Source of the DNA: Macrostomum lignano
Taxonomy: Eukaryota
Length of the DNA: 64,000 nucleotides
Direction: 5' to 3'
Assembly (NCBI GenBank): GCA_002269645.1
Contig: NIVC01002074.1
Span: forward strand, 62,001-126,000
Every line of letters begins with the position of its first letter. The stretch's first letter is position 1. This document shows, piece after piece, positions 1 through 63,712 of the stretch. The translations under genes and the position numbers were made by a program. Below the pieces are notes generated by a model. It saw only the letters and a list, made by a program, of their open reading frames with translations, was not told the DNA's origin and searched no databases.

Positions 1-794
1 ATGGCAACGGTGTAGACGGTGACGCCGACGCCCGAGCCGACGCCGACGACTGCCGCCTGCTGCGAGACCAGCTGGGCGACGCTCTTCGCCAGTGCAACGC
101 CGCATGCTGCGCAGCCGAGCAGATGTGCACCTTGGCTGAGCTGCCAATCAGCGACGACTTGGCCGACGCCGGCAAGGGATTGCGGCTGGACGCGCGGCTG
201 TACCGCCTCGGCTGCCTGCGCCGGTTGCCGTCGGGCAAGAGGCTGCTGGTCTGCCTGACCGGCGACTGCCTGCTGCTCATCGCCTGCCGCAGCGGCCCGA
301 GGCACTTCCGGCTGCTGGAAGGCATCCGACTGGATGGCCTCGAGGTCGACCTTCAGCCAGTTGAGGCGTCGGTTGCTATGGAGACAAACGCGTTTGCCGT
401 GAGCGGAACTTTCAGCCTTCGGCAGAGGCAGCGCTGGCGGCGTGTTGCGCTGGCAGCTGAGACACCGCGGGAGCAGCGACTCTGGCTGGAGGATCTGGCG
501 GCGGCTCGTGCTGGAGCTGCAGACGGCTCCCCCTCGGCGCCTTTTGAACTGACGGCGCTGCCAATGCCGCCACCGATATCGACGGAGCTCCAGATGCTTC
601 AGCGACGCTTGTCAGTTGCGCGTGCCTGCTGGCATCTCGATGGTGGCGTCAGTATTGGCGCCGGCGAGTTGGCGCGTTGGCGCGCCTGCCGGCTCAGCGG
701 CCACCTGCTGCGGAAGCTGCGCGACTCGCCCGGCTGGCAGCGGCTCTGGGTGGTGCTGGCCTGGGCGGCCCTGCACTTTTACAAGTCCTACCAT
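1..794 (+). CDS. FARP: FARP-like RhoGEF, exon open from window start (end of DH region, PH1, start of PH2)
   Basis: Frame open from nt 3. RLSGHLLRKLRDSPGWQRLWVVL..LHFYKSYH matches FARP PH2 (LSGNLLRKFKNSNGWQKLWVVF..LFFYKSHQ). Donor CAT|GTTAGT at 795, phase 0. Confidence 0.85.
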
Positions 795-828
795 GTTAGT
801 GCGGGGGACTGGGAGACCGTAGCGCTTA

Positions 829-1045
829 GGAATGTACTTTTAGTGCTAATTGTAAAATGCACCTTTAGTGTTTATGATGGAATGAACTCTTGGTGATAAT
901 GGTAGAATGTACTTTTAGTGTCTATGGTGGAATGTACTTTTAGTGTCTATGGTGGAATGTACTTTTAGTGTCTATGGTGGAATGTACTTTTAGTGTCTAT
1001 TGTGTAGTGTACTTTTAGTGCTTGTGGTGAAATGTACCTTTAGTG
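829..1045. repeat. 25-bp minisatellite (FARP intron)
   Basis: GAATGTACTTTTAGTGTCTATGGTG, degenerate at the edges. Confidence 0.85.
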
Positions 1046-9918: not shown

Positions 9919-10090
9919 TCACACAATGCTCTCTTTGCGATAGGATTGCAAGGAGAATACTCTGCGGCCTTTAACTCTGTGCAACAGCCTCTGATAATAG
10001 TCTAGCATTGCGGCGTCCCATCGAGTCTTGTTCTTTGAGTACAGATTCAAGTAGATGCCCAGCACCACTACCAGGCCGCTCCACACGTAT
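9919..10090 (-). CDS. SLC35B3: SLC35B3 terminal exon
   Basis: ctttcag|(Q)YVWSGLVVVLGIYLNLYSKN...stop. Confidence 0.9.
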
Positions 10091-10119
10091 CTGAAAGGAT
10101 TCGGGTGTTTTATATGCAT

Positions 10120-10938
<819 letters not shown>

Positions 10939-10965
10939 GCAAAATAACATACTTCAGCTACTTAC

Positions 10966-11035
10966 TGCATAGTGAACGGCTTTGAAAAGAAGAAAAATGA
11001 CAGCACAATGGTGACCGCTTTTCTGCATGTGGTTA
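10966..11035 (-). CDS. SLC35B3: SLC35B3 exon 6
   Basis: ttttag|(V)TTCRKAVTIVLSFFFFSKPFTM(Q)|gtaagt. Confidence 0.9.
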
Positions 11036-11118
11036 CTAAAATTACAATTAAATTATGATAACTACGAAAGTTGCAATATAACTTAAAATACAATTTATAG
11101 TTTAAAAATGATATTCAC

Positions 11119-11230
11119 CAGTAACAGCGGGCAGAGCGCCATAGGACTGCACTAATAGCAACACGAACTGCATGCCAACGTAACCAGTAATAGACATGAT
11201 GAATGTGCAGCCGTAGATGCGCCACACGTG
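11119..11230 (-). CDS. SLC35B3: SLC35B3 exon 5
   Basis: tttgcag|HVWRIYGCTFIMSITGYVGMQFVLLLVQSYGALPAVT|gtgaat. Confidence 0.88.
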
Positions 11231-11339
11231 CTGCAAACCAGATGAATTCATGCATTTAGACAGATCAATTATAACTTATATATTTGGGGCGAATGAGTGA
11301 GTGATGGCATACCAGATATGGAATACATCCAATGCGTTG

Positions 11340-11757
11340 CAGATGGGGTATCGGGATGGCAAATGGCATGGGGTATCGGGATTTGAAAATGGGGTATCGG
11401 GAAGGCAGATGGGGTATCGGGATTTGAAGATGGGCTATCGGGATGGCAGATGGGGTATCGGGATTTGAAGATGGGGTATCGGGATGGCAGATGGGGTACC
11501 GGGATTTGAAGATGGGCTATCGGGATGGCAGATGGGGTATCGGGATTTGAAGATGGGGTATCGGGATGGCAGATGGGGTACCGGGATTTGAAGATGGGCT
11601 ATCGGGATGGCAGATGGGGTATCGGGATTTGAAGATGGGGTATCGGGATGGCAGATGGCAGATAAGGTATCGGGATTTGAAGATGGGGTACCGGGATGCC
11701 AGATGGGGTATCGGGATTTAAAGATGGGGTACCGGGATGCCAGATGGGGTATGGCAG
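11340..11757. repeat. Alternating 20/21-bp minisatellite
   Basis: GATGGGGTATCGGGATGGCA / GATGGGGTATCGGGATTTGAA. Confidence 0.9.
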
Positions 11758-11791
11758 ATGGAATTATGAATTCCTAAACGGTAAAACTCAC

Positions 11792-11884
11792 TTGATTTCC
11801 ATAGGCCAAGCCGGCAAAGAGCTTGTTGGTGACGAGCAGGCCGGGAATAAGGTAGCCAAATCCAATGAAAAAGGTGTACAAAAT
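11792..11884 (-). CDS. SLC35B3: SLC35B3 exon 4
   Basis: tttgcag|ILYTFFIGFGYL...GNQ|gtgagt, 31 codons, phase 0. Confidence 0.85.
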
Positions 11885-11965
11885 CTGCAAAAAATTAAAG
11901 CAAACCTATATTAGAATAGAGAAGACAAATACGCAGGATTAAGAAGAGTCAAAATAGTAACTCAC

Positions 11966-12063
11966 CATCTCCGATGCAGTGTGATTATAGGCCTTCATCG
12001 TTCGCTCCTGGACATTGCCAATTGCTCCGTCTGCGCAGAGGGCCAAGCTCATTAGGAATACGC
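11966..12063 (-). CDS. SLC35B3: SLC35B3 exon 3
   Basis: Read by hand: ggcag|GC GTA...SLALCADGAIGNVQERTMK...EM|gtgagt. Phase matches exon 2. Confidence 0.9.
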
Positions 12064-12174
12064 CTGCCAGTGTTGTGGGCAGAGATAACGATTAGAGGGA
12101 GCGCTGGGTAGGAGGACTGGATTAGACTTGCGCGTGTAGAGAGGAAGGGAGGTAAAGGAAGATGACGGAATTTG

Positions 12175-12735
12175 AGCAGAGGGGAGATAGTGAATAGAGC
12201 AGTAGAGTAGAGGACAAATGGTAGATTAGATAGGGTGAAATGACAGTAGGAGAATGGGAGAGTTGAGAAGGGAGAGAATCGATAGAGGAGAGTAGAAAAG
12301 GGGAGAGTTGATAGGAAAGAGTAGAGAAGAGAAAGGTGACAGAAGAGAGTAGAGAAGGGGAGAGAGGTGACAGGAGAGTAGAGAAGGGGAGAGAAGTGGC
12401 AGAGGAGAGTAGAGAAGGGGAGAGTTGATAGGAAAGAGTAGAGAAGAGAAAGGTGACAGAGGAGAGTAGAGAAGGGAGAGAGGTGACAGAGGAGAGTAGA
12501 GAAGCGAGAGAGGTGACAGAGAAGAGTAGAGAAGGAGAGAGAGGTGACAGAGGAGAGTAGAGAAGGGGAGAGAGGTGACAGAAGAGATTAGAGAAGGGGA
12601 GAGAGGTGACAGAGGAGAGTAGAGAAGGGGAGAGAGGTGACAGGGGAGAGTAGAGAAGGAGAGGTGACAGAGGAGAGTAGAGAAGCGAGAGAGGTGACAG
12701 GGGAGAGTAGAGAAGGAGAGGTGACAGAGGAGGTT
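12175..12735. repeat. Purine-rich degenerate minisatellite (about 28-31 bp)
   Basis: GTGACAGAGGAGAGTAGAGAAGGGGAGAGAG variants. Confidence 0.9.
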
Positions 12736-13123
12736 GTGAGGAGAGGAAAATCGGTAAGAGTAGATAGGATAGGAGGCAATTATGCAGAAAAGTCCAGAAA
12801 ATGTCACTATATCTTTTTTTCTGTTTTACATTTCTAAATTTACTACATAAAGGTAAAGAGAGGAAGTCAAACAGGATACCAAAGAAACACTGAGTCTGAA
12901 TATCAACACTGCGATTTACGTAGGTAAACAGTTTAAGCATTAATTGATAAATTTTATTGGTTTATTGGCTTTTTTCCGCCGGTCATAAATTAAATTAACA
13001 TGAAAGAAATACGAATAGAGAATAATTCTAGTTCTATAGTGATTACATTGACTAAATAATACTACAGCAGGAAATTCTGTCAGGAACAATCATCTCCCAC
13101 CCCAACTATAATCTGCCAGCCAG

Positions 13124-13456
13124 TCAGTCTCCAGCAAACTCCCGTTCAACCTCTCGCCGGTCCCTTGCGTACACCGCCCGGTCCAGCCACCAGGCCAGCG
13201 CCGGCTGCAGCTGGGCGGGGGTCAGCGGCTGAAATCGATCGCTGTCGCGTTCGGCAGATTCGAGCTGACGACCTAGGCAGGCCAACTGACTATACAGTTC
13301 GGAGCCGACAGAGAGGCTGGAGTCCAGGTTCATGGTGAGCTCGGCTACTTCGGCCGCTTGAGCAACGCCGCGGAGCAGACGGTGGAGCAGCGAGTCGGAG
13401 TCGCTTGGCCGGCGGGCCGATGGCTCAGCTCGGAGCTGGCTGCGTCTGAGGCACTC
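13124..13456 (-). CDS. Unidentified nested gene, exon 2 (to stop; 258 aa total)
   Basis: Acceptor aatacag|GAG in phase with exon 1, open to stop at 13124. Two minus-strand AATAAA at about 12953-12965. Confidence 0.7.
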   Translation of the reverse strand, partial: ECLRRSQLRAEPSARRPSDSDSLLHRLLRGVAQAAEVAELTMNLDSSLSVGSELYSQLACLGRQLESAERDSDRFQPLTPAQLQPALAWWLDRAVYARDRREVEREFAGD

Positions 13457-13574
13457 CTGTATTGAAATTTTTAGGGCATTTGTTATAATGGGCAGCTGAA
13501 GAGTAGCTTTGATGGCATGGGTTTTATTGGTTACTAAGTAGAGTTGAGCAGTTTTATTATAGGCTTGACTGGTT

Positions 13575-13835
13575 CAAGTAGTTCAGGGGTAGACTTCAGA
13601 AACTCCGGTAGTTCAGGGGTAGATTTCAGGAACTCCAGTAGTTCAGGGGTAGATTTCAGAAACTCCAGTAGTTTAGGACTAGATTTCAGGAACTCCAGTA
13701 GTTCAGGGGTAGATTTCAGAAACTCCGGTAGTTTAGGACTAGATTTCAGGAACTCCAGTAGTTTAGGGGTAGATTTCAGGAACTCCGGTAGTTCAGGGGT
13801 AGATTTCAGGAACTCCGGTAGTTCAGGGGTAGAAT
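13575..13835. repeat. 30-bp minisatellite in nested-gene intron
   Basis: GTAGTTCAGGGGTAGATTTCAGGAACTCCA. Confidence 0.9.
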
Positions 13836-13894
13836 ATTCCAGCCCCTAAAGGATTCCAGCTGTGCAGGACTATAAGACTAAACGATAAACTCAC

Positions 13895-14338
13895 CTGAAA
13901 CGCCGGCTGAGCAGTTAACCTGCCGCACATCTCAGGCGACCTTCGCCCCAATTCCGCGGCCAACCGACAGAGCAGCCGCTCCTCGTCCAGAAGCAGCCGA
14001 CAATAACGCGACGCGAGCTCCGACACGCAGCGCCGTTTCCGAGCGGCCTCGTCGCGATCAATGACGCCAGATTTCCGACGAGCCGATTCCGCCAGTAGGT
14101 CGTCGAGGGCCGCCCGGCCGGACACGGCGGACGGCAGCAGGACGTCTAGCAGGCCGTCAGCTCCGGCCGAAGCGGCTAAAGAGATTCGCCGGCCGAAACC
14201 GCCGGCTGGAACTGGACGACCGGACAGTCGGCGAAGATCGCGCATAGCCGCTAAGCAAGTAGATTTGCGGCACTGGCGTATCGCGTCCAGCAGGTCCGGG
14301 ATCGATTCATCAGCAGTCGTCTGCTTTTGCTGCTGCAT
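13895..14338 (-). CDS. Unidentified nested gene, exon 1 (148 codons)
   Basis: GC-rich ORF from ATG 14338. Donor CAG|GTGAGT at 13894, phase 0. Exon-like composition as in neighbouring genes. Confidence 0.7.
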
Positions 14339-14856
14339 AGTCTAAGCCGCCAGCTCAAAAAGGCTTTTGTTTTACTGTCTACCTAGCGCTTCTCTTGCTG
14401 CTTTGAGAATTTCTTAGCACGGATCCACGGATAAAAAAAGCAGCAGACGGGCTACTGCAAATCCGCAGCCACCCCCCAAACCCCCCTCACGCGTATTGAT
14501 TGACTGAACCAAATTGATTTCCGCAGCGATCGGGACTAGCCTAGAATATTCAGTTCCTCCTCTCTCCACTCACTGGCTTCTTTATATGAACATATTTAAA
14601 GTACTGCATTGTGGGTCGCTAGGGCAAGAGCGACTCTCTATACAAGCCAAAAAATACTTTTCGCGTACAATGTACAAAAATAAGCATACAGTGAACTCTA
14701 ACTTCAAGAGGAAGGATTATATGGAAATATGTTGATATTATTGACTCGAGGAGTCAATCAGGCGTGACAACATTTCGAATAGTTTTGAATGGGGATTAGA
14801 AGAATCAGTCTTGGGGAGGATTAAGACATTCACTCTAGAAAACGATTAGAAATAGC

Positions 14857-15480
14857 ACTTTCAGATGGGGATTAACTAAGGCACTTTCAGATGGGGATTA
14901 ACTAAGGCACTTTCAGATGGGGATTAACTAAGGCACTTTCAGATGGGGATTAACTAAGGCACTTTCAGATGGGGATTAACTAAGGCACTTTCAGATGGGG
15001 ATTAACTAAGGCACTTTCAGATGGGGATTAACTAAGGCACTTTCAGATGGGGATTAACTAAGGCCCTTTCAGATGGGGATTAACTAAGGCACTTTCAGAT
15101 GGGGATTAACTAAGGCACTTTCAGATGGGGATTAACTAAGGCACTTTCAGATGGGGATTAACTAAGGCACTTTCAGATGGGGATTAACTAAGGCCCTTTC
15201 AGATGGGGATTAACTAAGGCACTTTCAGATGGGGATTAACTAAGGCACTTTCAGATGGGGATTAACTAAGGCACTTTCAGATGGGGATTAACTAAGGCCC
15301 TTTCAGATGGGGATTAACTAAGGCACTTTCAGATGGGGATTAACTAAGGCCCTTTCAGATGGGGATTAACTAAGGCACTTTCAGATGGGGATTAACTAAG
15401 GCACTTTCAGATGGGGATTAACTAAGGCACTTTCAGATGGGTATTAACTAAGGCACTTTCAGATGGGGATTAACTAAGGC
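14857..15480. repeat. 26-bp minisatellite, about 24 copies
   Basis: GCACTTTCAGATGGGGATTAACTAAG. Confidence 0.95.
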
Positions 15481-15518
15481 AGTCTCATATTCGAACTTAT
15501 TAATAAGCCTCAGCTCAC

Positions 15519-15781
15519 CAAACAAGTCAAAGTTGGGCTGTATCTTGCTGTCAGCCAGGGTGAACCAAATCAAGCCAAAGATCATGCAGAACATGGCTGA
15601 TACATCGTAGACATTGTAGCGGCGGCCCTGTATCAGAATGCCGCCAATCATAGTTGGCACCAGTTTGCAGCATTTCATAATCACCTGAGTAGGATAGCTC
15701 AGGTAACCCAGCGCCGTATTGCTGGCTCCCATAGTTGTGACGGTGAGAAATCCCAACAGCGCGTACGTTCGCCAGGGGATT
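15519..15781 (-). CDS. SLC35B3: SLC35B3 exon 2
   Basis: IPWRTY...SNTALGYLSYPTQVIMKCCKLVPTMIGGILIQGRRY...WFTLADS..PNF is a hallmark of PAPST2. Donor G|GTGAGC. Confidence 0.92.
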
Positions 15782-16004
15782 CTGCGAGCCAATTATGGGA
15801 AAAAATTAATTGGGAGAATTTTTTGCTGAGATTTGACACAAAACAGTAGTTATGAATAGCATTAAATGTACATACTTCTAAAGTAGCTCAGTAAACATTT
15901 TATTACCATCTGTATTTATCGAATTTTCGCACTTTAACAAGGACTAAAAACGGTCAAAAGCCTATGCTTATGCAGGCCAATATTATTTAATTTTCGTTCA
16001 ACTT

Positions 16005-16945
16005 CATAAACTTCACAAACTCGAAACCTCACAAGCTGGAAACCTCCCAAGCTGGAAAGCTCCCAAGCAGGAAACCTCACAAGCAGGAAACCTCACAAGC
16101 TGGAAACCTCACAAACTGGAAACCTCACAAGTTGGAAACCTCAACAAGCTGGAAACCTCGAGCTGGAAACCTCACAAACTGGAAACCTCACAAGCTGGAA
16201 ACCTCACAAACTGGAAACCTCTCAAGCTGGAAACCTCACAAACTGGAAACCTCACAAGCTGGAAACATCACAAGTTGGAAATCTCACAAGTTGGAAACCT
16301 CACAAGTTGGAAACATCACAAGTTGGAAACCTCACAAGTTGGAAACCTCACAAGTTGGAAACCTCACAAGTTGGAAACCTCACAAGTTGGAAACCTCACA
16401 AGCTGGAAACCTCACAAGTTGGAAACCTCACAAGTTGGAAACCTCACAAGTTGGAAACCTCACAAGTTGGAAACCTCACAAACTGGAAACATCACAAGCT
16501 GGAAACCTCACAAGTTGGAAACCTCACAAGTTGGAAACCTCACAAACTGGAAACCTCACAAGCTGGAAAACTCACAAGCTGGAAACCTCACAAGTTGGAA
16601 ACCTCACAAGCTGGAAACCTCACAAGTTGGAAACCTCACAAGTTGGAAACCTCACAAGTTGGAAACCTCACAAATTGGAAACCTCACAAGCTGGAAACCT
16701 CACAAGCTGGAAACATCACAAGCTGGAAACCTCACAAGTTGGAAACCTCACAAGTTGGAAACCTCACAAACTGGAAACCTCACAAGCTGGAAACCTCACA
16801 AACTGGAAACCTCACAAACTGGAAACCTCACAAGCTTGAAACCTCACAAACTGGAAACCTCACAAACTGGAAACCTCACAAACTGGAAACCTCACAAGCT
16901 GGAAACCTCGAGCTGGAAACCTCGCAAACTCAAAACGAAATAAAC
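16005..16945. repeat. 16-bp minisatellite (SLC35B3 intron 1)
   Basis: TTGGAAACCTCACAAG. Confidence 0.95.
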
Positions 16946-17011
16946 TCGAAACCATCACAAACTTGAAACCCCACAAGCCCGAAACTTGCTCCCAGCTTAA
17001 ACAACACTCAC

Positions 17012-17538
17012 GTCCTGACTTTCTCAATAGACAGGCCGCCTCTCTGCTCAGCGCAGGCCAGCAGCACATAGAAGCCGAACTGCACAGCAGTGATAAAAGT
17101 GCCATGAGGCCGGACGCCTTCAGTTCGAAATATCAATTCGATAACGTAGCCGTATAGGCAGTAGAATATGAACACTCCCAAGCAGCCAGTGGTGAATAGG
17201 AATTCGGTAGATTTGCCAGCCAAATTGAAGCCCATCACTATGAGCACTTCTGGCTCCTTCTTCTTGGCGTCTGCCGCTTCCAGTGTTGGAGTTTTAATGC
17301 TGATGCTGGAGTGACCGGCGCCTCCGCTGGGCGCCTGCTGCTGCTGCTGCATTCTGTTATCGCTAGTAGGCGATGTCGAAGCAACAGTCGAAGCTGACAA
17401 AGTCGACGACGCTGACTCGGCTGCACCAGCGGCGACGTCAATTAGATTACTATTATTACCGTTACTATTACTACTACTAATATTGGTACCGCTAGTCCAT
17501 CCCGCCGAAGCCACGGCTGCTGTGCGTCGGCTTGACAT
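17012..17538 (-). CDS. SLC35B3: SLC35B3 (PAPS transporter 2) exon 1
   Basis: Low-complexity N-terminus then GCLGVFIFYCLYGYVIELIF...FITAVQF. Donor AC|GTGAGT. Start codon choice (17538) is tentative. Confidence 0.85.
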
Positions 17539-18211
17539 GCAAAAAAACACGGCGAGAAAATTGCAGTTTTAATATAGCAAAAAAACGCTACTGATATTAC
17601 TTGACTAAGAATTTTTCAAATGCTAACTAAAAACTGATTTATTAAAAAGTGCTATCCGTCTACTATGAGTAAAATTTCTAGCGTTCTTTTATTTAAACTT
17701 AAAAATAATTGAAGAGTAAAACAGTTGACAGAATAAGCTTCGCATCAAACAAGGGCTGTTGAGTTAAACAATTTTTTATTTTTGCCGTCTTGTGAACGAG
17801 CGTGCTTTGTGCTAATCACGTGCACGTTTTCTAAAGTTCTGAACTTGTTTATATAGATGGCAGCGTTGGGGCTTTTTGGAACTCATTTGAATAAGATTAG
17901 CTTGTTAATTACATTAATGCTAGCTATAACTATTTTATGCGCAAGTACATACTACTAAAAGAGTGATTTATTTAACTGTTTTTTATATATTGGGGGTGGC
18001 AATGGAGAATTAAAGTGCGTTTAAATGTTCAAAAAAACTGTTTTTAAATGTTACACTATTCTAGAGTCTTGTTTGCAATGGTTCACTGAGAGGTGTCAGA
18101 ACTAGCGACGGGTCGAGCCAGGAGAACTCTGAAATGAATTGTTAGAAAGATTTTAACAATGCAACTGGATTAGGAAACAAAAAATTCCATAGCTATTTAT
18201 TGAGGGTCTGT

Positions 18212-18495
18212 GAGGCTGGCCCAGCAACTGAGGATCTGGGAGGCTGGCCCAGAAACTGAGGATCTGGGAGGCTGGCCCAGAAACTGAGGATCTGGGAGGC
18301 TGGCCCAGAAACTGAGGATCTGGGAGGCTGGCCCAGCAACTGAGGATCTGGGAGGCTGTCCCAGAAACTGAGGATCTGGGAGGCTGGCCCAGAAACTGAG
18401 GATCTGGGAGGCTGGCCCAGAAACTGAGGATCTGGGAGGCTGGCCCAGAAACTGAGGATCTGGGAGGCTGGCCCAGAAACTGAGGATCTGGGAGG
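18212..18495. repeat. 28-bp minisatellite
   Basis: AGGCTGGCCCAGAAACTGAGGATCTGGG. Confidence 0.92.
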
Positions 18496-19378: not shown

Positions 19379-20483
19379 TGCACTCATGATTCACAGTTCA
19401 GTATACTTAAATAGAGAAAATCAAAAACTGTACATGGCAATAGACAAATGGGTTCAGTCCGGTCAATAATTGTACATTAAGAGACGAAATTATAACAAAT
19501 TATTTGGCCATCACACAGAAAATGCAACCACAGAGCAAACAGTATTGGCGGGGAGAGAGCATCAAACCCACACCAAGCCTAGAAAACCTTGAGCTGTAAA
19601 CTGGCTCCTCCACCTGCAAGCTGAGTATTCAAACTAGGTCTATGATGCTTAATGTGCAAGGCTTCCAGCACTCTGAGCTTGCCATCAAATCTACATCTAT
19701 CCAAAACAGTGAAAAGCTCAGTTGGCTCATGCTCACAACAAGCATTGCAACTAAGCAAGTGATCATGCACAACAGAGTTATTCATTCTATGCTCCCTAGC
19801 CCTAGTGTACAGGTGCCTTTTGGTTTTTCCTATGTAGGAAATGCTCTGATCACCAGAGCAACAAAATTGATAGATGACACCAGCAGACAAAGCTCTAGGG
19901 GCCTTCGACTTCAACCTGCTAACAAACTGGCCAATTTTGGCAGTCTGAAACACAACCATGACCCAAGAGTTGAAATACTTCAAGAAGGTTCTTTTAAGCT
20001 TCTTTTCCAGACTCAGGGATGGGACTCCAAGGAATGGGAGTTTGATCGAGAAATCACTGAAATTCGACCTCTTATCTTCGTCAGTCAAACTAGACTCAGT
20101 CATTTTCTTAGTCAGAAATCTGTTCAGCACTTTACCAACAAAACCCCTAGGGAAACTGTTACGTTGAAAAATGTCAGTGAGCTTGACGACTTCTTGGTGG
20201 AAAGATTGCAAAGTACTACAGATACTAAACGCTCTATGCATCATGCACCCGACAAGACTAGCCTTCCATTGGCACGGCTCAACACATTAAAGTTGAGCAT
20301 GAGACTAGTAAACGTGGTGATGGCCACGTGTGATGATGTGTTTCTGTGTGATGGCCAAATAATTTGTTATAATTTTGTCTCTTAATGTACAATTATTGAC
20401 CAGGCTGAACCCATTTGTCTATTGCCATGTACAGTTTTTGATTTTTTCTATTTAAGTATACTGAACTGTGAATCATGAGTGCA

Positions 20484-62955: not shown

Positions 62956-63446
62956 TCCATTCGGCAATTCCAGGCCGAGTCACTGGCGGCTGTACGCGAG
63001 CAGGTGACGAGCAGCCTGCATCATATTTACACCCGCGATCAGCCCAGTCAGCAGCAGCTGACGCCTCAACAATCCGAGGAGCTGGACCGCCTAGCCGATG
63101 CCAAAGTGTTCTGCTGTCGAGCGCCCCTGGCCGAGCTTGTCGCTCTTGACTGCGTCTGCGCCTGTCTGGCCGCCTGTCCGGAGCCGAAGCGACTGTTCGA
63201 CCGGCTGTTTCATTCCGCCGGAGCCGGCTGGCCGGTGCAGCGGGAGAAGCGCCGGGCCACCCAGCTGAGCCGCCTGCTGTCTCTGTGCCTGTGCACCGGC
63301 ACCGGCGGACCCGTGCTGGAATGCGCGGCCTCTTGGCTTCGCCGCCACGAAGGCCGTCCGGCTGTCCGACTGGTGGCCAGAGCTCTGGCCGAGGACGCGA
63401 CCGCGATGCCGCCTGAGCAGCTGCGCCGGCTGGGACAGCTTGGCAG
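62956..63446 (+). CDS. INTS15: Integrator subunit 15 (C7orf26) exon; start uncertain
   Basis: PVLECAASWL matches the recalled C7orf26 motif exactly, with flanking LSRLLSL and RALAED similar. Donor AG|GTGAGT. In-frame TGA at 62953. Confidence 0.8.
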
Positions 63447-63712
63447 GTGAGTGCGAGAGTGGATGAGAATGGGTACTCTGTCTGTCTATTTCTGTTTGGT
63501 TCCCTGCTTAAATGGCGCTTTAAAGTTATTGATTTTTTATCTTTCTAAGAATCACTTCGTTTAAATGTAGTCAGAATTGCCCTTTCAAATCGCCATGAGA
63601 ATCGCCCTTTCAAATCGCCATGAGAATCGCCCCTTCAAATCGCCACGAGAATCACCCATTGAATCTTCTCTAATATTCGAAAATATAAAGTCAATCCCAA
63701 TGCCCTTTGTAG

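What the first reader, a model, noticed from the sequence alone, without database searches (positions are those of the whole stretch)
13124..14345. Unidentified 258-aa gene nested on the SAME strand inside SLC35B3 intron 2
Seen: two GC-rich exons joined by a canonical phase-0 GT-AG intron, with own ATG, stop and two AATAAA, while SLC35B3 exons 2 and 3 splice in phase around it. Knowledge: nested genes are usually antisense, because same-strand nesting puts a poly(A) site inside the host intron. Seen: a TTAG acceptor lies 3 nt before its ATG. Inference: in an SL trans-splicing animal the host pre-mRNA could give either SLC35B3 mRNA or, by trans-splicing at 14342 plus intronic polyadenylation, this mRNA as mutually exclusive products. 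The protein matches no family I recognise; it looks helical and Arg/Leu/Ala-rich.
Basis: partly seen in the sequence, partly recalled or inferred. Interest (0 to 1): 0.75.

Follow-up and report, generated by a model that had tools for sequence, protein, structure and literature searches.

The report
Unannotated orphan gene inside SLC35B3 intron
A two-exon, 258-codon gene with no known relatives sits on the same strand inside intron 2 of the flatworm Macrostomum lignano's SLC35B3 gene. It evolves like a real protein-coding gene, but whether it is made by trans-splicing of the host transcript remains untested.

Summary
On the minus strand, ATG 14338 opens a 444-nt exon, then a CAG|GTGAGT…ACAG| phase-0 intron (13894-13457), then a 333-nt exon ending in TGA at 13124. 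This gives 258 aa. The exons are 64-66% GC and the intron 43%. The unit lies wholly inside the 3,455-nt intron 2 of a 7-exon, 444-aa SLC35B3 gene on the same strand.

The organism is Macrostomum lignano, a flatworm that uses spliced-leader (SL) trans-splicing. A diverged paralogous copy (L001, Mlig_3_7 scaffold NIVC01004374.1) keeps the ORF, both splice sites, the 5' flank and the poly(A) signals:
- 13 substitutions, 10 at codon position 3.
- dN/dS 0.16, against 0.26 for the host.
- No indels in the exons, against 9 in about 890 nt of flanks.

It is therefore very probably a real protein-coding gene.

It has no homologue outside M. lignano, no Pfam, PDB or fold match, and no transposon features. 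GenBank does not annotate it at any of the three Mlig_3_7 copies. UniProt holds it only as frameshifted chimeras with SLC35B3 and NPL4.

The trans-splicing and intronic-polyadenylation model could not be tested here. The sequence is compatible with it but does not require it.

Verdict: a new member of a known kind, a sense-strand nested orphan gene. Interest is modest.

The parts
13895..14338 (-). Nested gene exon 1 (CDS, ATG at 14338-14336; 148 codons).
   Evidence: It is 98.4% identical to the L001 copy, with 7 substitutions and no indels.
13457..13894 (-). Nested gene intron, phase 0, GTGAGT...ACAG. It holds a 30-nt minisatellite at 13577-13833.
   Evidence: The same donor and acceptor are present in L001, where the intron is 668 nt.
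13124..13456 (-). Nested gene exon 2 (CDS, 110 codons plus TGA at 13126-13124).
   Evidence: It is 98.2% identical to L001, with 6 substitutions and no indels.
12930..13123 (-). Putative 3' UTR with two AATAAA (12966-12961, 12958-12953). The 3' end is inferred to lie near 12940-12930.
   Evidence: for the hexamers. There are only 5 differences from L001 in the first 200 nt after the stop, and divergence rises beyond that. The end point is inferred, not mapped.
14339..14440 (-). 5' flank with zero differences between paralogues. It is a putative 5' UTR, outron end or core promoter, and includes the TTAG acceptor candidate at 14345-14342.
   Evidence: no differences in about 100 nt, against 54 differing columns in the 416 nt upstream of it. 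SL ATG plus ACT ATG is in frame.
14455..14461 (-). Alternative acceptor candidate TTTGCAG|TAG, 116 nt before the ATG. It fits the published M. lignano SL acceptor motif [T/C]TNCAG.
   Evidence: motif from PMC8629364. In L001 the C is deleted, leaving TTTG-AG, so the site is not conserved.
14441..14854 (-). Unique, non-repeat sequence between the 26-nt array and the conserved 5' block. It is the candidate promoter region.
   Evidence: The whole 516-nt upstream region (14854-14339) is 93% identical to L001 with 6 indel events, and all of the differences fall in this segment. No promoter evidence could be obtained.
12064..15518 (-). SLC35B3 intron 2 (3,455 nt), the host intron. Minisatellites flank the nested gene: a 26-mer x24 at 14855-15481 and a 31-mer x16 at 12257-12732.
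15519..15781 (-). SLC35B3 exon 2. It ends in phase 1, with donor TTTG|GTGAGC.
11966..12063 (-). SLC35B3 exon 3. It starts in phase 1, with acceptor CTGGCAG|GC.
   Evidence: It is joined to exon 2 in GenBank protein P0005 of the paralogous locus.
9919..17538 (-). Whole SLC35B3 coding span (7 exons, 444 aa, Pfam UAA family).

Best explanation
This is a genuine protein-coding gene restricted to Macrostomum (an orphan). It has two exons and encodes 258 aa. It lies in the sense orientation inside intron 2 of the Macrostomum lignano PAPS-transporter gene SLC35B3.

**The protein**
- It is soluble and mildly basic (pI 8.7), with 8 Cys.
- It is predicted to be all-helical, with no transmembrane segment and no recognisable domain.

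**How it is most likely expressed**
- It makes its own mRNA of roughly 1.0-1.1 kb.
- The 5' end lies in or just upstream of the perfectly conserved ~100 nt before the ATG.
- I lean towards transcription starting in the 516-nt unique region at 14854-14339, possibly followed by SL trans-splicing at TTAG|ACT (14342/14341) or TTTGCAG|TAG (14455/14454).
- The 3' end is made at the tandem AATAAA at 12966-12953.

**Relationship to the host**
- Host and nested gene are translationally separate. Every cross-splice between them runs into a stop within 3-10 codons.

**Shown versus inferred**
- Shown: the anatomy, the nesting, conservation with a coding signature, and the lack of homologues.
- Inferred: the mRNA boundaries, the promoter, and any trans-splicing.
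- Protein function is unknown. My guess, at low confidence, is a lineage-specific regulatory or adaptor protein with restricted (for example germline) expression. This is by analogy with same-strand nested genes in Drosophila, which are the class most enriched for highest expression in testis.
For: **Anatomy and compositional contrast**
-.

**Organism**
- The only protein hits are M. lignano models.
- The host protein is 98% identical to M. lignano PAA47660.1.

**Comparison with the paralogous locus L001**
- The ORF is intact at 258 aa with the same GT/AG sites.
- There are 13 substitutions, 10 of them at codon position 3 (binomial p = 0.0016).
- 9 are synonymous and 4 non-synonymous. The four amino-acid changes are D10E, V105A, V179A and S204C.
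- dS is 0.044, dN is 0.007 and omega is 0.16. Omega exceeds 1 in the other two sense frames, and every other sense or antisense frame is interrupted by stop codons.
- The host gene in the same pair has omega 0.26.

**Exons versus flanks**
- The exons show 1.7% divergence and no indels.
- Adjacent unique non-coding sequence shows 4-7% divergence and 9 indel events (Fisher p = 3e-5).

**Conservation footprint**
- The conserved block runs from about 14440 to about 12930, the size of an mRNA with short UTRs ending just past the AATAAA pair.

**Other copies**
- Two further Mlig_3_7 copies (L002, L003) carry exons identical to the window.

**No in-frame fusion with the host**
- Host exon 2 spliced to either nested acceptor stops after 10 codons.
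- Nested exon 1 spliced to host exon 3 stops after 3 codons.
- An in-frame TAG lies immediately upstream of the ATG.

**Not a transposon**
- There are no flanking inverted or long direct repeats.
- There is no second copy in the window or elsewhere in L001.

**Composition**
- GC-rich genes are normal in this window, for example the exons encoding a PH domain and an INTS15 domain.
Against: - There is no transcript, SL-read, poly(A)-read or peptide evidence. None could be reached with these tools.
- The transcript-based GenBank annotation of Mlig_3_7 lists only COX6C, SLC35B3 and NPL4 at all three paralogous loci. Either the gene is weakly or narrowly expressed, or it was filtered out.
- The selection signal rests on a single pairwise comparison with 13 substitutions.
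- No orthologue in another species could be looked for. The collections searched may not hold other Macrostomum genomes.
- The AlphaFold model is of low confidence (pLDDT 42).
- No promoter evidence exists. A GTGAGT donor-like site at 14573 is not conserved in L001.
Confidence: 0.6

Rival explanations
1. The nested cistron has no promoter of its own. It is matured from the SLC35B3 primary transcript, or from a longer COX6C-SLC35B3-NPL4 transcript, by SL trans-splicing at an acceptor in intron 2 plus cleavage and polyadenylation at 12966-12953. Each primary transcript would then yield either SLC35B3 mRNA or the nested mRNA.
For: - M. lignano trans-splices 30-39% of its genes, and about 7% of transcriptional units carry several SL sites (PMC8629364, PMC5730564).
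- The SL ends in ATG. TTAG|ACT is the only one of 14 upstream AG sites that places that ATG in frame and open into the ORF.
- A motif-conforming TTTGCAG lies 116 nt upstream.
- The neighbours COX6C, SLC35B3 and NPL4 are co-oriented at spacings of about 1.1 kb. NPL4 has a canonical TTCCAG acceptor 12 nt before its ATG, so the locus may be an operon.
- The absence of a separate gene model in GenBank would fit an RNA seen only as part of the host unit.
Against: - There is no RNA evidence.
- TTAG does not fit [T/C]TNCAG, and the TTTGCAG site is broken in L001.
- Inside the host pre-mRNA these acceptors have an upstream cis donor (host exon 2). The rule quoted in PMC8629364 therefore predicts cis-splicing, which would give a truncated 273-aa transporter, rather than trans-splicing.
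- The 100-nt perfectly conserved 5' block is longer than an acceptor region needs.
- An in-frame SL ATG is expected one time in three by chance.
Confidence: 0.2
2. It is not a protein-coding gene. It is a GC-rich conserved non-coding segment, or a non-coding RNA, whose open frame and splice-like sites are fortuitous.
For: - At 65% GC, open frames of 110-150 codons arise by chance at a rate of a few per cent per frame (my own estimate).
- There is no homologue anywhere, no domain and no confident fold.
- It is unannotated in the transcript-based GenBank annotation.
- Only 13 substitutions support the selection test.
Against: - Third-position excess (10 of 13, p = 0.0016) and omega 0.16 are specific to this frame. 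All five other frames carry stop codons.
- There are no indels in 777 nt, against 9 in about 890 nt of flanks.
- The exon/intron GC contrast coincides exactly with consensus GT and AG sites, which are conserved in L001.
Confidence: 0.12
3. The two exons are alternative terminal exons of SLC35B3. They would give a truncated transporter isoform or a decoy targeted for nonsense-mediated decay, rather than a separate gene.
For: - They are on the same strand and have usable acceptors downstream of the host exon 2 donor.
- The older UniProt gene models fuse the ORF with SLC35B3 exons (P0001-P0003).
Against: - Splicing host exon 2 to either acceptor is out of frame and stops after 10 codons, so the conserved 258-codon frame would never be read.
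- Selection acts on the nested frame itself.
- The UniProt fusions are frameshifted, use differing junctions and start directly after in-frame stop codons. These are marks of ORF-stitching on an error-rich assembly (my reading of the sequences).
Confidence: 0.06
4. It is a gene of a transposable element, or a recent insertion, that landed in the intron.
For: - The intron is repeat-rich.
- The unit's GC content (65%) is higher than the host's coding sequence (50%).
Against: - There are no terminal inverted or long direct repeats around it.
- It has no transposase, reverse-transcriptase or integrase domain.
- It contains an intron.
- It is found only at this syntenic position in all paralogous copies, and nowhere else in the window or the loci.
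Confidence: 0.02

Closest known systems
Same-strand nested (intronic) protein-coding genes, as catalogued in Drosophila melanogaster (Lee and Chang 2013, PMC3814207)
   Same: - The whole gene lies inside one intron of a host gene on the same strand.
- It has few introns (one).
- It is young or lineage-restricted.
- Host and nested gene are functionally unrelated.
- There is a predicted hazard of mis-splicing between the two genes.
   Different: - The animal here has SL trans-splicing, which offers an extra way to make the 5' end.
- Most same-strand nested genes in flies are intronless (72.5%), whereas this one keeps an intron.
- Expression is not documented.
Cholinergic gene locus: unc-17/VAChT nested in the first intron of cha-1/ChAT (C. 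elegans, Drosophila, mammals; from my own knowledge, not checked here)
   Same: - A same-strand gene lies inside an intron of another gene.
- In that locus, the two mRNAs are alternative products of one primary transcript.
   Different: - There, the nested gene shares a 5' non-coding exon with the host, sits in intron 1 and is functionally coupled to it.
- Here the nested gene sits after 263 host codons, and cis-splicing from the host gives a premature stop.
- No shared exon or functional link is evident.
M. lignano SL trans-spliced operons, or 'transcriptional units' with several SL sites (Wudarski et al. 2017, PMC5730564; PMC8629364)
   Same: - Same organism and same strand.
- There are AG acceptors close to the ATG.
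- There is a downstream AATAAA.
- The flanking genes are co-oriented at about 1 kb spacing.
   Different: - Operon cistrons lie one after another, each following the previous gene's poly(A) site.
- This one is inside an intron, so maturing it would destroy the host message.
- I found no published description of such an intron-embedded cistron in the papers searched.
Flatworm-specific orphan genes of M. lignano (for example PMC5816591)
   Same: It has no homologue outside the lineage and no domain.
   Different: Those genes have expression and RNAi data. This one has none and is not in the GenBank gene set.

Membership tests
Same-strand nested protein-coding gene | The whole coding unit lies within a single intron of the host, on the host's strand. 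| tested here: met
   The unit spans 14338-13124 (plus signals from about 14461 to 12953), inside intron 2 at 15518-12064. Both are on the minus strand.
Same-strand nested protein-coding gene | The host exons on either side are joined in one mature transcript. | tested here: met
   Phases match: exon 2 ends in phase 1 and exon 3 starts in phase 1. The transcript-based GenBank protein PAA47660.1 (P0005) of the paralogous locus contains all 7 exons and is 98% identical over 100% of the length.
Same-strand nested protein-coding gene | The nested ORF is protein-coding, shown by selection on the reading frame. | tested here: met
   Omega is 0.16, 10 of 13 substitutions are at position 3 (p = 0.0016), and there are no indels. 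One paralogue pair only.
Same-strand nested protein-coding gene | The nested gene gives its own mature mRNA. | not testable with these tools
   No RNA data were reachable. Exact-sequence look-ups found nothing. There is only an indirect conservation footprint from about 14440 to about 12930.
SL trans-spliced gene or operon cistron of M. lignano | SL-containing reads end at an acceptor upstream of the ATG. | not testable with these tools
   No read data. The N-termini of P0001 and P0002 start directly after in-frame stop codons, so they are not evidence for an SL junction.
SL trans-spliced gene or operon cistron of M. lignano | The acceptor fits the enriched motif [T/C]TNCAG (PMC8629364). | tested here: inconclusive
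   GGCTTAG at 14342 does not fit. TTTGCAG at 14461-14455 fits in the window but has lost its C in L001.
SL trans-spliced gene or operon cistron of M. lignano | The cistron follows the poly(A) site of an upstream co-oriented gene within about 1 kb (repeat-adjusted). | tested here: not met
   What lies upstream is host exon 2 with a splice donor, not a 3' end. There is no AATAAA or ATTAAA in 14860-14339.
Cholinergic-locus type nested gene (shared 5' exon, alternative splicing) | A host 5' exon splices productively onto the nested gene. | tested here: not met
   Host exon 2 spliced to either nested acceptor gives a stop after 10 codons. The nested ATG would then lie about 800 nt into the message.
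Transposable-element gene | Terminal repeats, dispersed copies and transposition-related domains. | tested here: not met
Any described protein family (Pfam, PDB) | A significant sequence or fold match. | tested here: not met
   - Pfam: none at E <= 10.
- PDB phmmer: none at E <= 10.
- HMMER against 1.84 billion representatives: only three M. lignano models plus one spurious repeat protein.
- Foldseek: best E 1.2 and TM below 0.3, on a model with pLDDT 42.

The most novel reading that the evidence does not exclude
The nested cistron has no promoter of its own. It is carved out of the host pre-mRNA, or out of a COX6C-SLC35B3-NPL4 operon pre-mRNA, by SL trans-splicing inside intron 2 together with intronic polyadenylation. 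It would be an 'operon gene inside an intron'. SLC35B3 mRNA and the orphan's mRNA would then be mutually exclusive outputs of each primary transcript, and their ratio would be set by competition between cis-splicing, trans-splicing and poly(A) site use.
Probability: 0.15. Interest if true: 0.6.

Novelty: new member of a known kind. Interest (0 to 1): 0.3.

Why it matters
**If real**
- It adds a selected but unannotated orphan gene to the M. lignano gene set.
- It exposes a blind spot in annotation. Ab initio models fused it to its host, and the transcript-based set omitted it at all three paralogous copies.

**For the biology of nested genes**
- It is a clean test case in a transgenic-capable flatworm. 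The question is how a sense-strand nested gene with its own intron and poly(A) signals coexists with an essential-type host gene, the Golgi PAPS transporter, in an organism that has SL trans-splicing.

**If the host-driven model were true**
- It would extend the operon concept to cistrons embedded in introns.
- It would give a direct read-out of the competition between cis-splicing and trans-splicing.

**As it stands**
- The arrangement itself is a known kind, and the mechanism is unproven.

Tried and rejected
**RNA evidence**
- It found nothing for the two genomic ORFs or for P0001 and P0002.
- The exact cluster look-up found neither the nested protein, the SL-ATG-extended form, nor the window's host protein.
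- A full-text search for 'Mlig014697' and a search of the supplements of PMC5816591 found nothing.

**Homology**
- The word-index search and the exhaustive HMMER search returned only three UniProt models.
- A fourth hit, P0004, is a translated tandem repeat and was rejected.
- The UniProt names ('DUF3336', 'ABC2_membrane', 'UN_NPL4') do not correspond to any domain in the nested part.

**Structure**
- The single-sequence AlphaFold2 model had pLDDT 42.
- Foldseek against PDB gave only noise. I draw nothing from it.

**A lead I dropped**
- I first read P0002's N-terminus 'TMQQQK', which starts right after TTAG, as a trace of an SL junction.
- I rejected this because P0001 also starts right after an in-frame stop. 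Both look like stop-to-stop ORF calls.

**Extra copies**
- I hoped L002 and L003 would add independent divergence data. Their nested exons and intron are identical to the window, so the selection test remains a single pair.

**Literature**
- Searches for a published intron-embedded SL cistron were unproductive.

**Not used**
- The sigma-70 promoter scanner was not used because it does not apply to a eukaryote.
Full report
**1. Is it there?**

Yes, on the minus strand.
- ATG at 14338 opens a 444-nt exon that ends at TTTCAG|GTGAGT (donor at 13894).
- A 438-nt intron ends at CAATACAG| (13457).
- A 333-nt exon runs to TGA at 13126-13124.
- The intron is phase 0 and the spliced product is 258 aa, rich in Leu, Arg and Ala (39, 37 and 35 residues).
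- The exons are 64% and 66% GC. The intron is 43% GC and carries an 8.6-copy 30-nt minisatellite.
- TTAG sits at 14345-14342, then ACT, then ATG. Its TAG is an in-frame stop, so the frame cannot be extended upstream.
- Two AATAAA lie at 12966-12953, 158-171 nt after the stop and outside the coordinates given in the finding.

**2. The host gene**

I rebuilt the host gene by hand from the sequence.
- It has seven minus-strand exons: 17538-17012, 15781-15519, 12063-11966, 11884-11792, 11230-11119, 11035-10966 and 10090-9919.
- All introns are GT-AG. The product is a 444-aa adenosine 3'-phospho 5'-phosphosulfate transporter 2 (SLC35B3, Pfam UAA).
- It is about 50-57% identical to animal SLC35B3 proteins.
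- Intron 2 (15518-12064, 3,455 nt) holds the whole nested unit between two minisatellite arrays.
- Exon 2 ends in phase 1 and exon 3 starts in phase 1.
- The GenBank protein PAA47660.1 (BOX15_Mlig014697g2), from the transcript-guided Mlig_3_7 annotation, has the same seven-exon content and is 98% identical. The host exons therefore belong to one transcript.

**3. Organism and copies**

- The only proteins similar to the nested ORF are three UniProt models from Macrostomum lignano. This holds for 5.8 billion clustered sequences and for an exhaustive HMMER pass over 1.84 billion representatives.
- Those models are frameshifted chimeras of the ORF with SLC35B3 and NPL4 exons.
- M. lignano trans-splices. 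Its SL is CGGTCTCTTACTGCGAAGACTCAATTTATTGCATG, and 30-39% of its genes are trans-spliced (PMC8629364, PMC5730564).
- Its genome consists of three paralogous copies (PMC10733133).
- I retrieved all three Mlig_3_7 copies of this locus: L001, L002 and L003. Each carries COX6C, SLC35B3 and NPL4 in the same order as the window.
- None of the three has an annotated gene in intron 2.
- L002 and L003 are identical to the window across the nested gene. L001 is a diverged copy.

**4. Is it coding?**

Compared with the window, L001 behaves as follows.
- The ORF is intact, with the same donor, acceptor, start and stop. The intron is 668 nt instead of 438 nt.
- There are 13 substitutions and no indels in 777 nt. 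Ten of the 13 fall at codon position 3 (binomial p = 0.0016).
- Nei-Gojobori counts are 9 synonymous and 4 non-synonymous. dS is 0.044, dN is 0.007 and omega is 0.16.
- Omega exceeds 1 in the other two sense frames, and all five other frames carry stop codons. This includes the antisense frame whose wobble positions coincide with the sense frame.
- The host gene in the same pair has dS 0.023, dN 0.006 and omega 0.26. The orphan is as constrained as its conserved host.
- Unique non-coding sequence beside it is 93-96% identical with 9 indel events in about 890 nt. The difference between exons and flanks gives Fisher p = 3e-5.

I conclude that it is very probably a real protein-coding gene. The caveat is that this rests on a single pair of sequences.

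**5. Extent of the transcript (inferred)**

- Differences between the window and L001 vanish in the last ~100 nt before the ATG.
- They stay low (5 in 200 nt) from the stop to just past the AATAAA pair, then rise.
- The conserved block, about 14440 to 12930, is what an mRNA with a 5' UTR of 100 nt or less and a 3' UTR of about 180 nt would leave.

**6. How is the 5' end made?**

This could not be tested. The sequence gives the following hints.
- Of 14 AG dinucleotides in the 120 nt upstream, only TTAG|ACT puts the SL's terminal ATG in frame and open into the ORF. The product would start MTMQQQ....
- This has a one-in-three chance of arising at random, and the site does not fit the published acceptor motif [T/C]TNCAG.
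- A motif-conforming TTTGCAG|TAG lies 116 nt upstream. There the SL ATG would be followed at once by a stop. That site has lost its C in L001.
- In the host pre-mRNA these acceptors have an upstream cis donor. The rule quoted in PMC8629364 then favours cis-splicing, which would give a 273-aa truncated transporter.
- The 100-nt perfectly conserved block is longer than an acceptor region needs.

I therefore lean towards an own start site in the 516-nt unique upstream region, with or without later SL addition. I put the host-driven, mutually exclusive model at about 0.15-0.2.

**7. What is the protein?**

- Mass 28.6 kDa, pI 8.7, GRAVY -0.43, and 8 Cys.
- No transmembrane segment (maximum Kyte-Doolittle 19-residue window 1.34) and no internal repeat.
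- Predicted all-helical, but at pLDDT 42.
- No Pfam, PDB or fold match.
- The function is unknown.
- By analogy with Drosophila, restricted (germline) expression is a reasonable but untested guess. There, same-strand nested genes are the class most enriched for highest expression in testis (PMC3814207).

**8. Comparison with known systems, and novelty**

- Sense-strand nested genes are a recognised minority class, about 29% of nested genes in Drosophila.
- Orphan genes are common in flatworms.
- This is therefore a new member of a known kind.
- It is not a cholinergic-locus type arrangement, because no productive shared exon exists.
- It does not meet the positional definition of an operon cistron, because no upstream poly(A) site exists.
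- It is not a transposon.
- What would be new is an intron-embedded cistron matured by SL trans-splicing. That remains a hypothesis.

**9. Verdict**

- Observation: confirmed.
- Gene: very probably real.
- Proposed mechanism: unproven.
- Interest: 0.3.

Noticed in passing
window 18872-4434, minus strand; L001, L002, L003: COX6C (18872-18609), SLC35B3 (17538-9919) and NPL4 (from about 8722 down to at least 4434) are co-oriented, with gaps of about 1.1 kb that contain minisatellites. NPL4 has a canonical TTCCAG acceptor 12 nt before its ATG, which puts the SL ATG in frame. COX6C has CCGCAG 21 nt before its ATG. The order is the same in all three Mlig_3_7 copies. This is a candidate SL operon.
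   Followed up: partly
window 10133-18495; L001 10001-21334: Every intron and spacer carries a different minisatellite: TCTA x204, a 41-mer x10, a 31-mer x16, a 30-mer x8.6, a 26-mer x24, a 16-mer x61 and a 28-mer x10.5. Copy numbers differ between paralogues. The SLC35B3 span is 7.6 kb in the window and 11.3 kb in L001, and the 26-mer array is about 0.6 kb against about 3.2 kb.
   Followed up: partly
window 12999 and downstream, compared with L002 13661 onward: The window is identical to L002 and L003 from 14854 to about 13000. This covers the upstream region, both exons, the intron and most of the 3' UTR. From 12999 downstream it differs at many positions. This mosaic suggests recombination or gene conversion between paralogous copies, or an assembly chimera.
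   Followed up: no
UniProt models P0001-P0003 (A0A1I8... entries, M. lignano): The only database proteins containing this ORF are frameshifted chimeras with SLC35B3 and NPL4 exons. Their names (DUF3336, ABC2_membrane, UN_NPL4 domain-containing) do not describe the orphan part. Both the window-type (S204) and L001-type (C204, A105) variants are represented among them.
   Followed up: yes
window 14573-14568, minus strand: A consensus donor-like CCA|GTGAGT sits 235 nt upstream of the nested ATG, just after a TATAAAG (about 14588). The GT is AT in L001, so a conserved 5' UTR intron is unlikely.
   Followed up: partly
window 19579-20244, minus strand: A 221-aa ORF just upstream of COX6C is overlapped by a 247-aa ORF on the opposite strand. 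It has no Pfam hit at E <= 0.01. By eye it looks like a remnant of a mobile element (a GIY-YIG-like C-terminus), but this is unverified.
   Followed up: partly
window 123-896 (+), 46052-42330 (-), 49537-48989 (-), 63004-63450 (+): Other gene fragments lie in the window: a PH-domain exon (62% GC), a three-exon Ldh_2 (malate/L-lactate dehydrogenase family) gene, a methyltransferase exon and an INTS15 exon. They show that GC-rich coding sequence is ordinary in this genome.
   Followed up: partly
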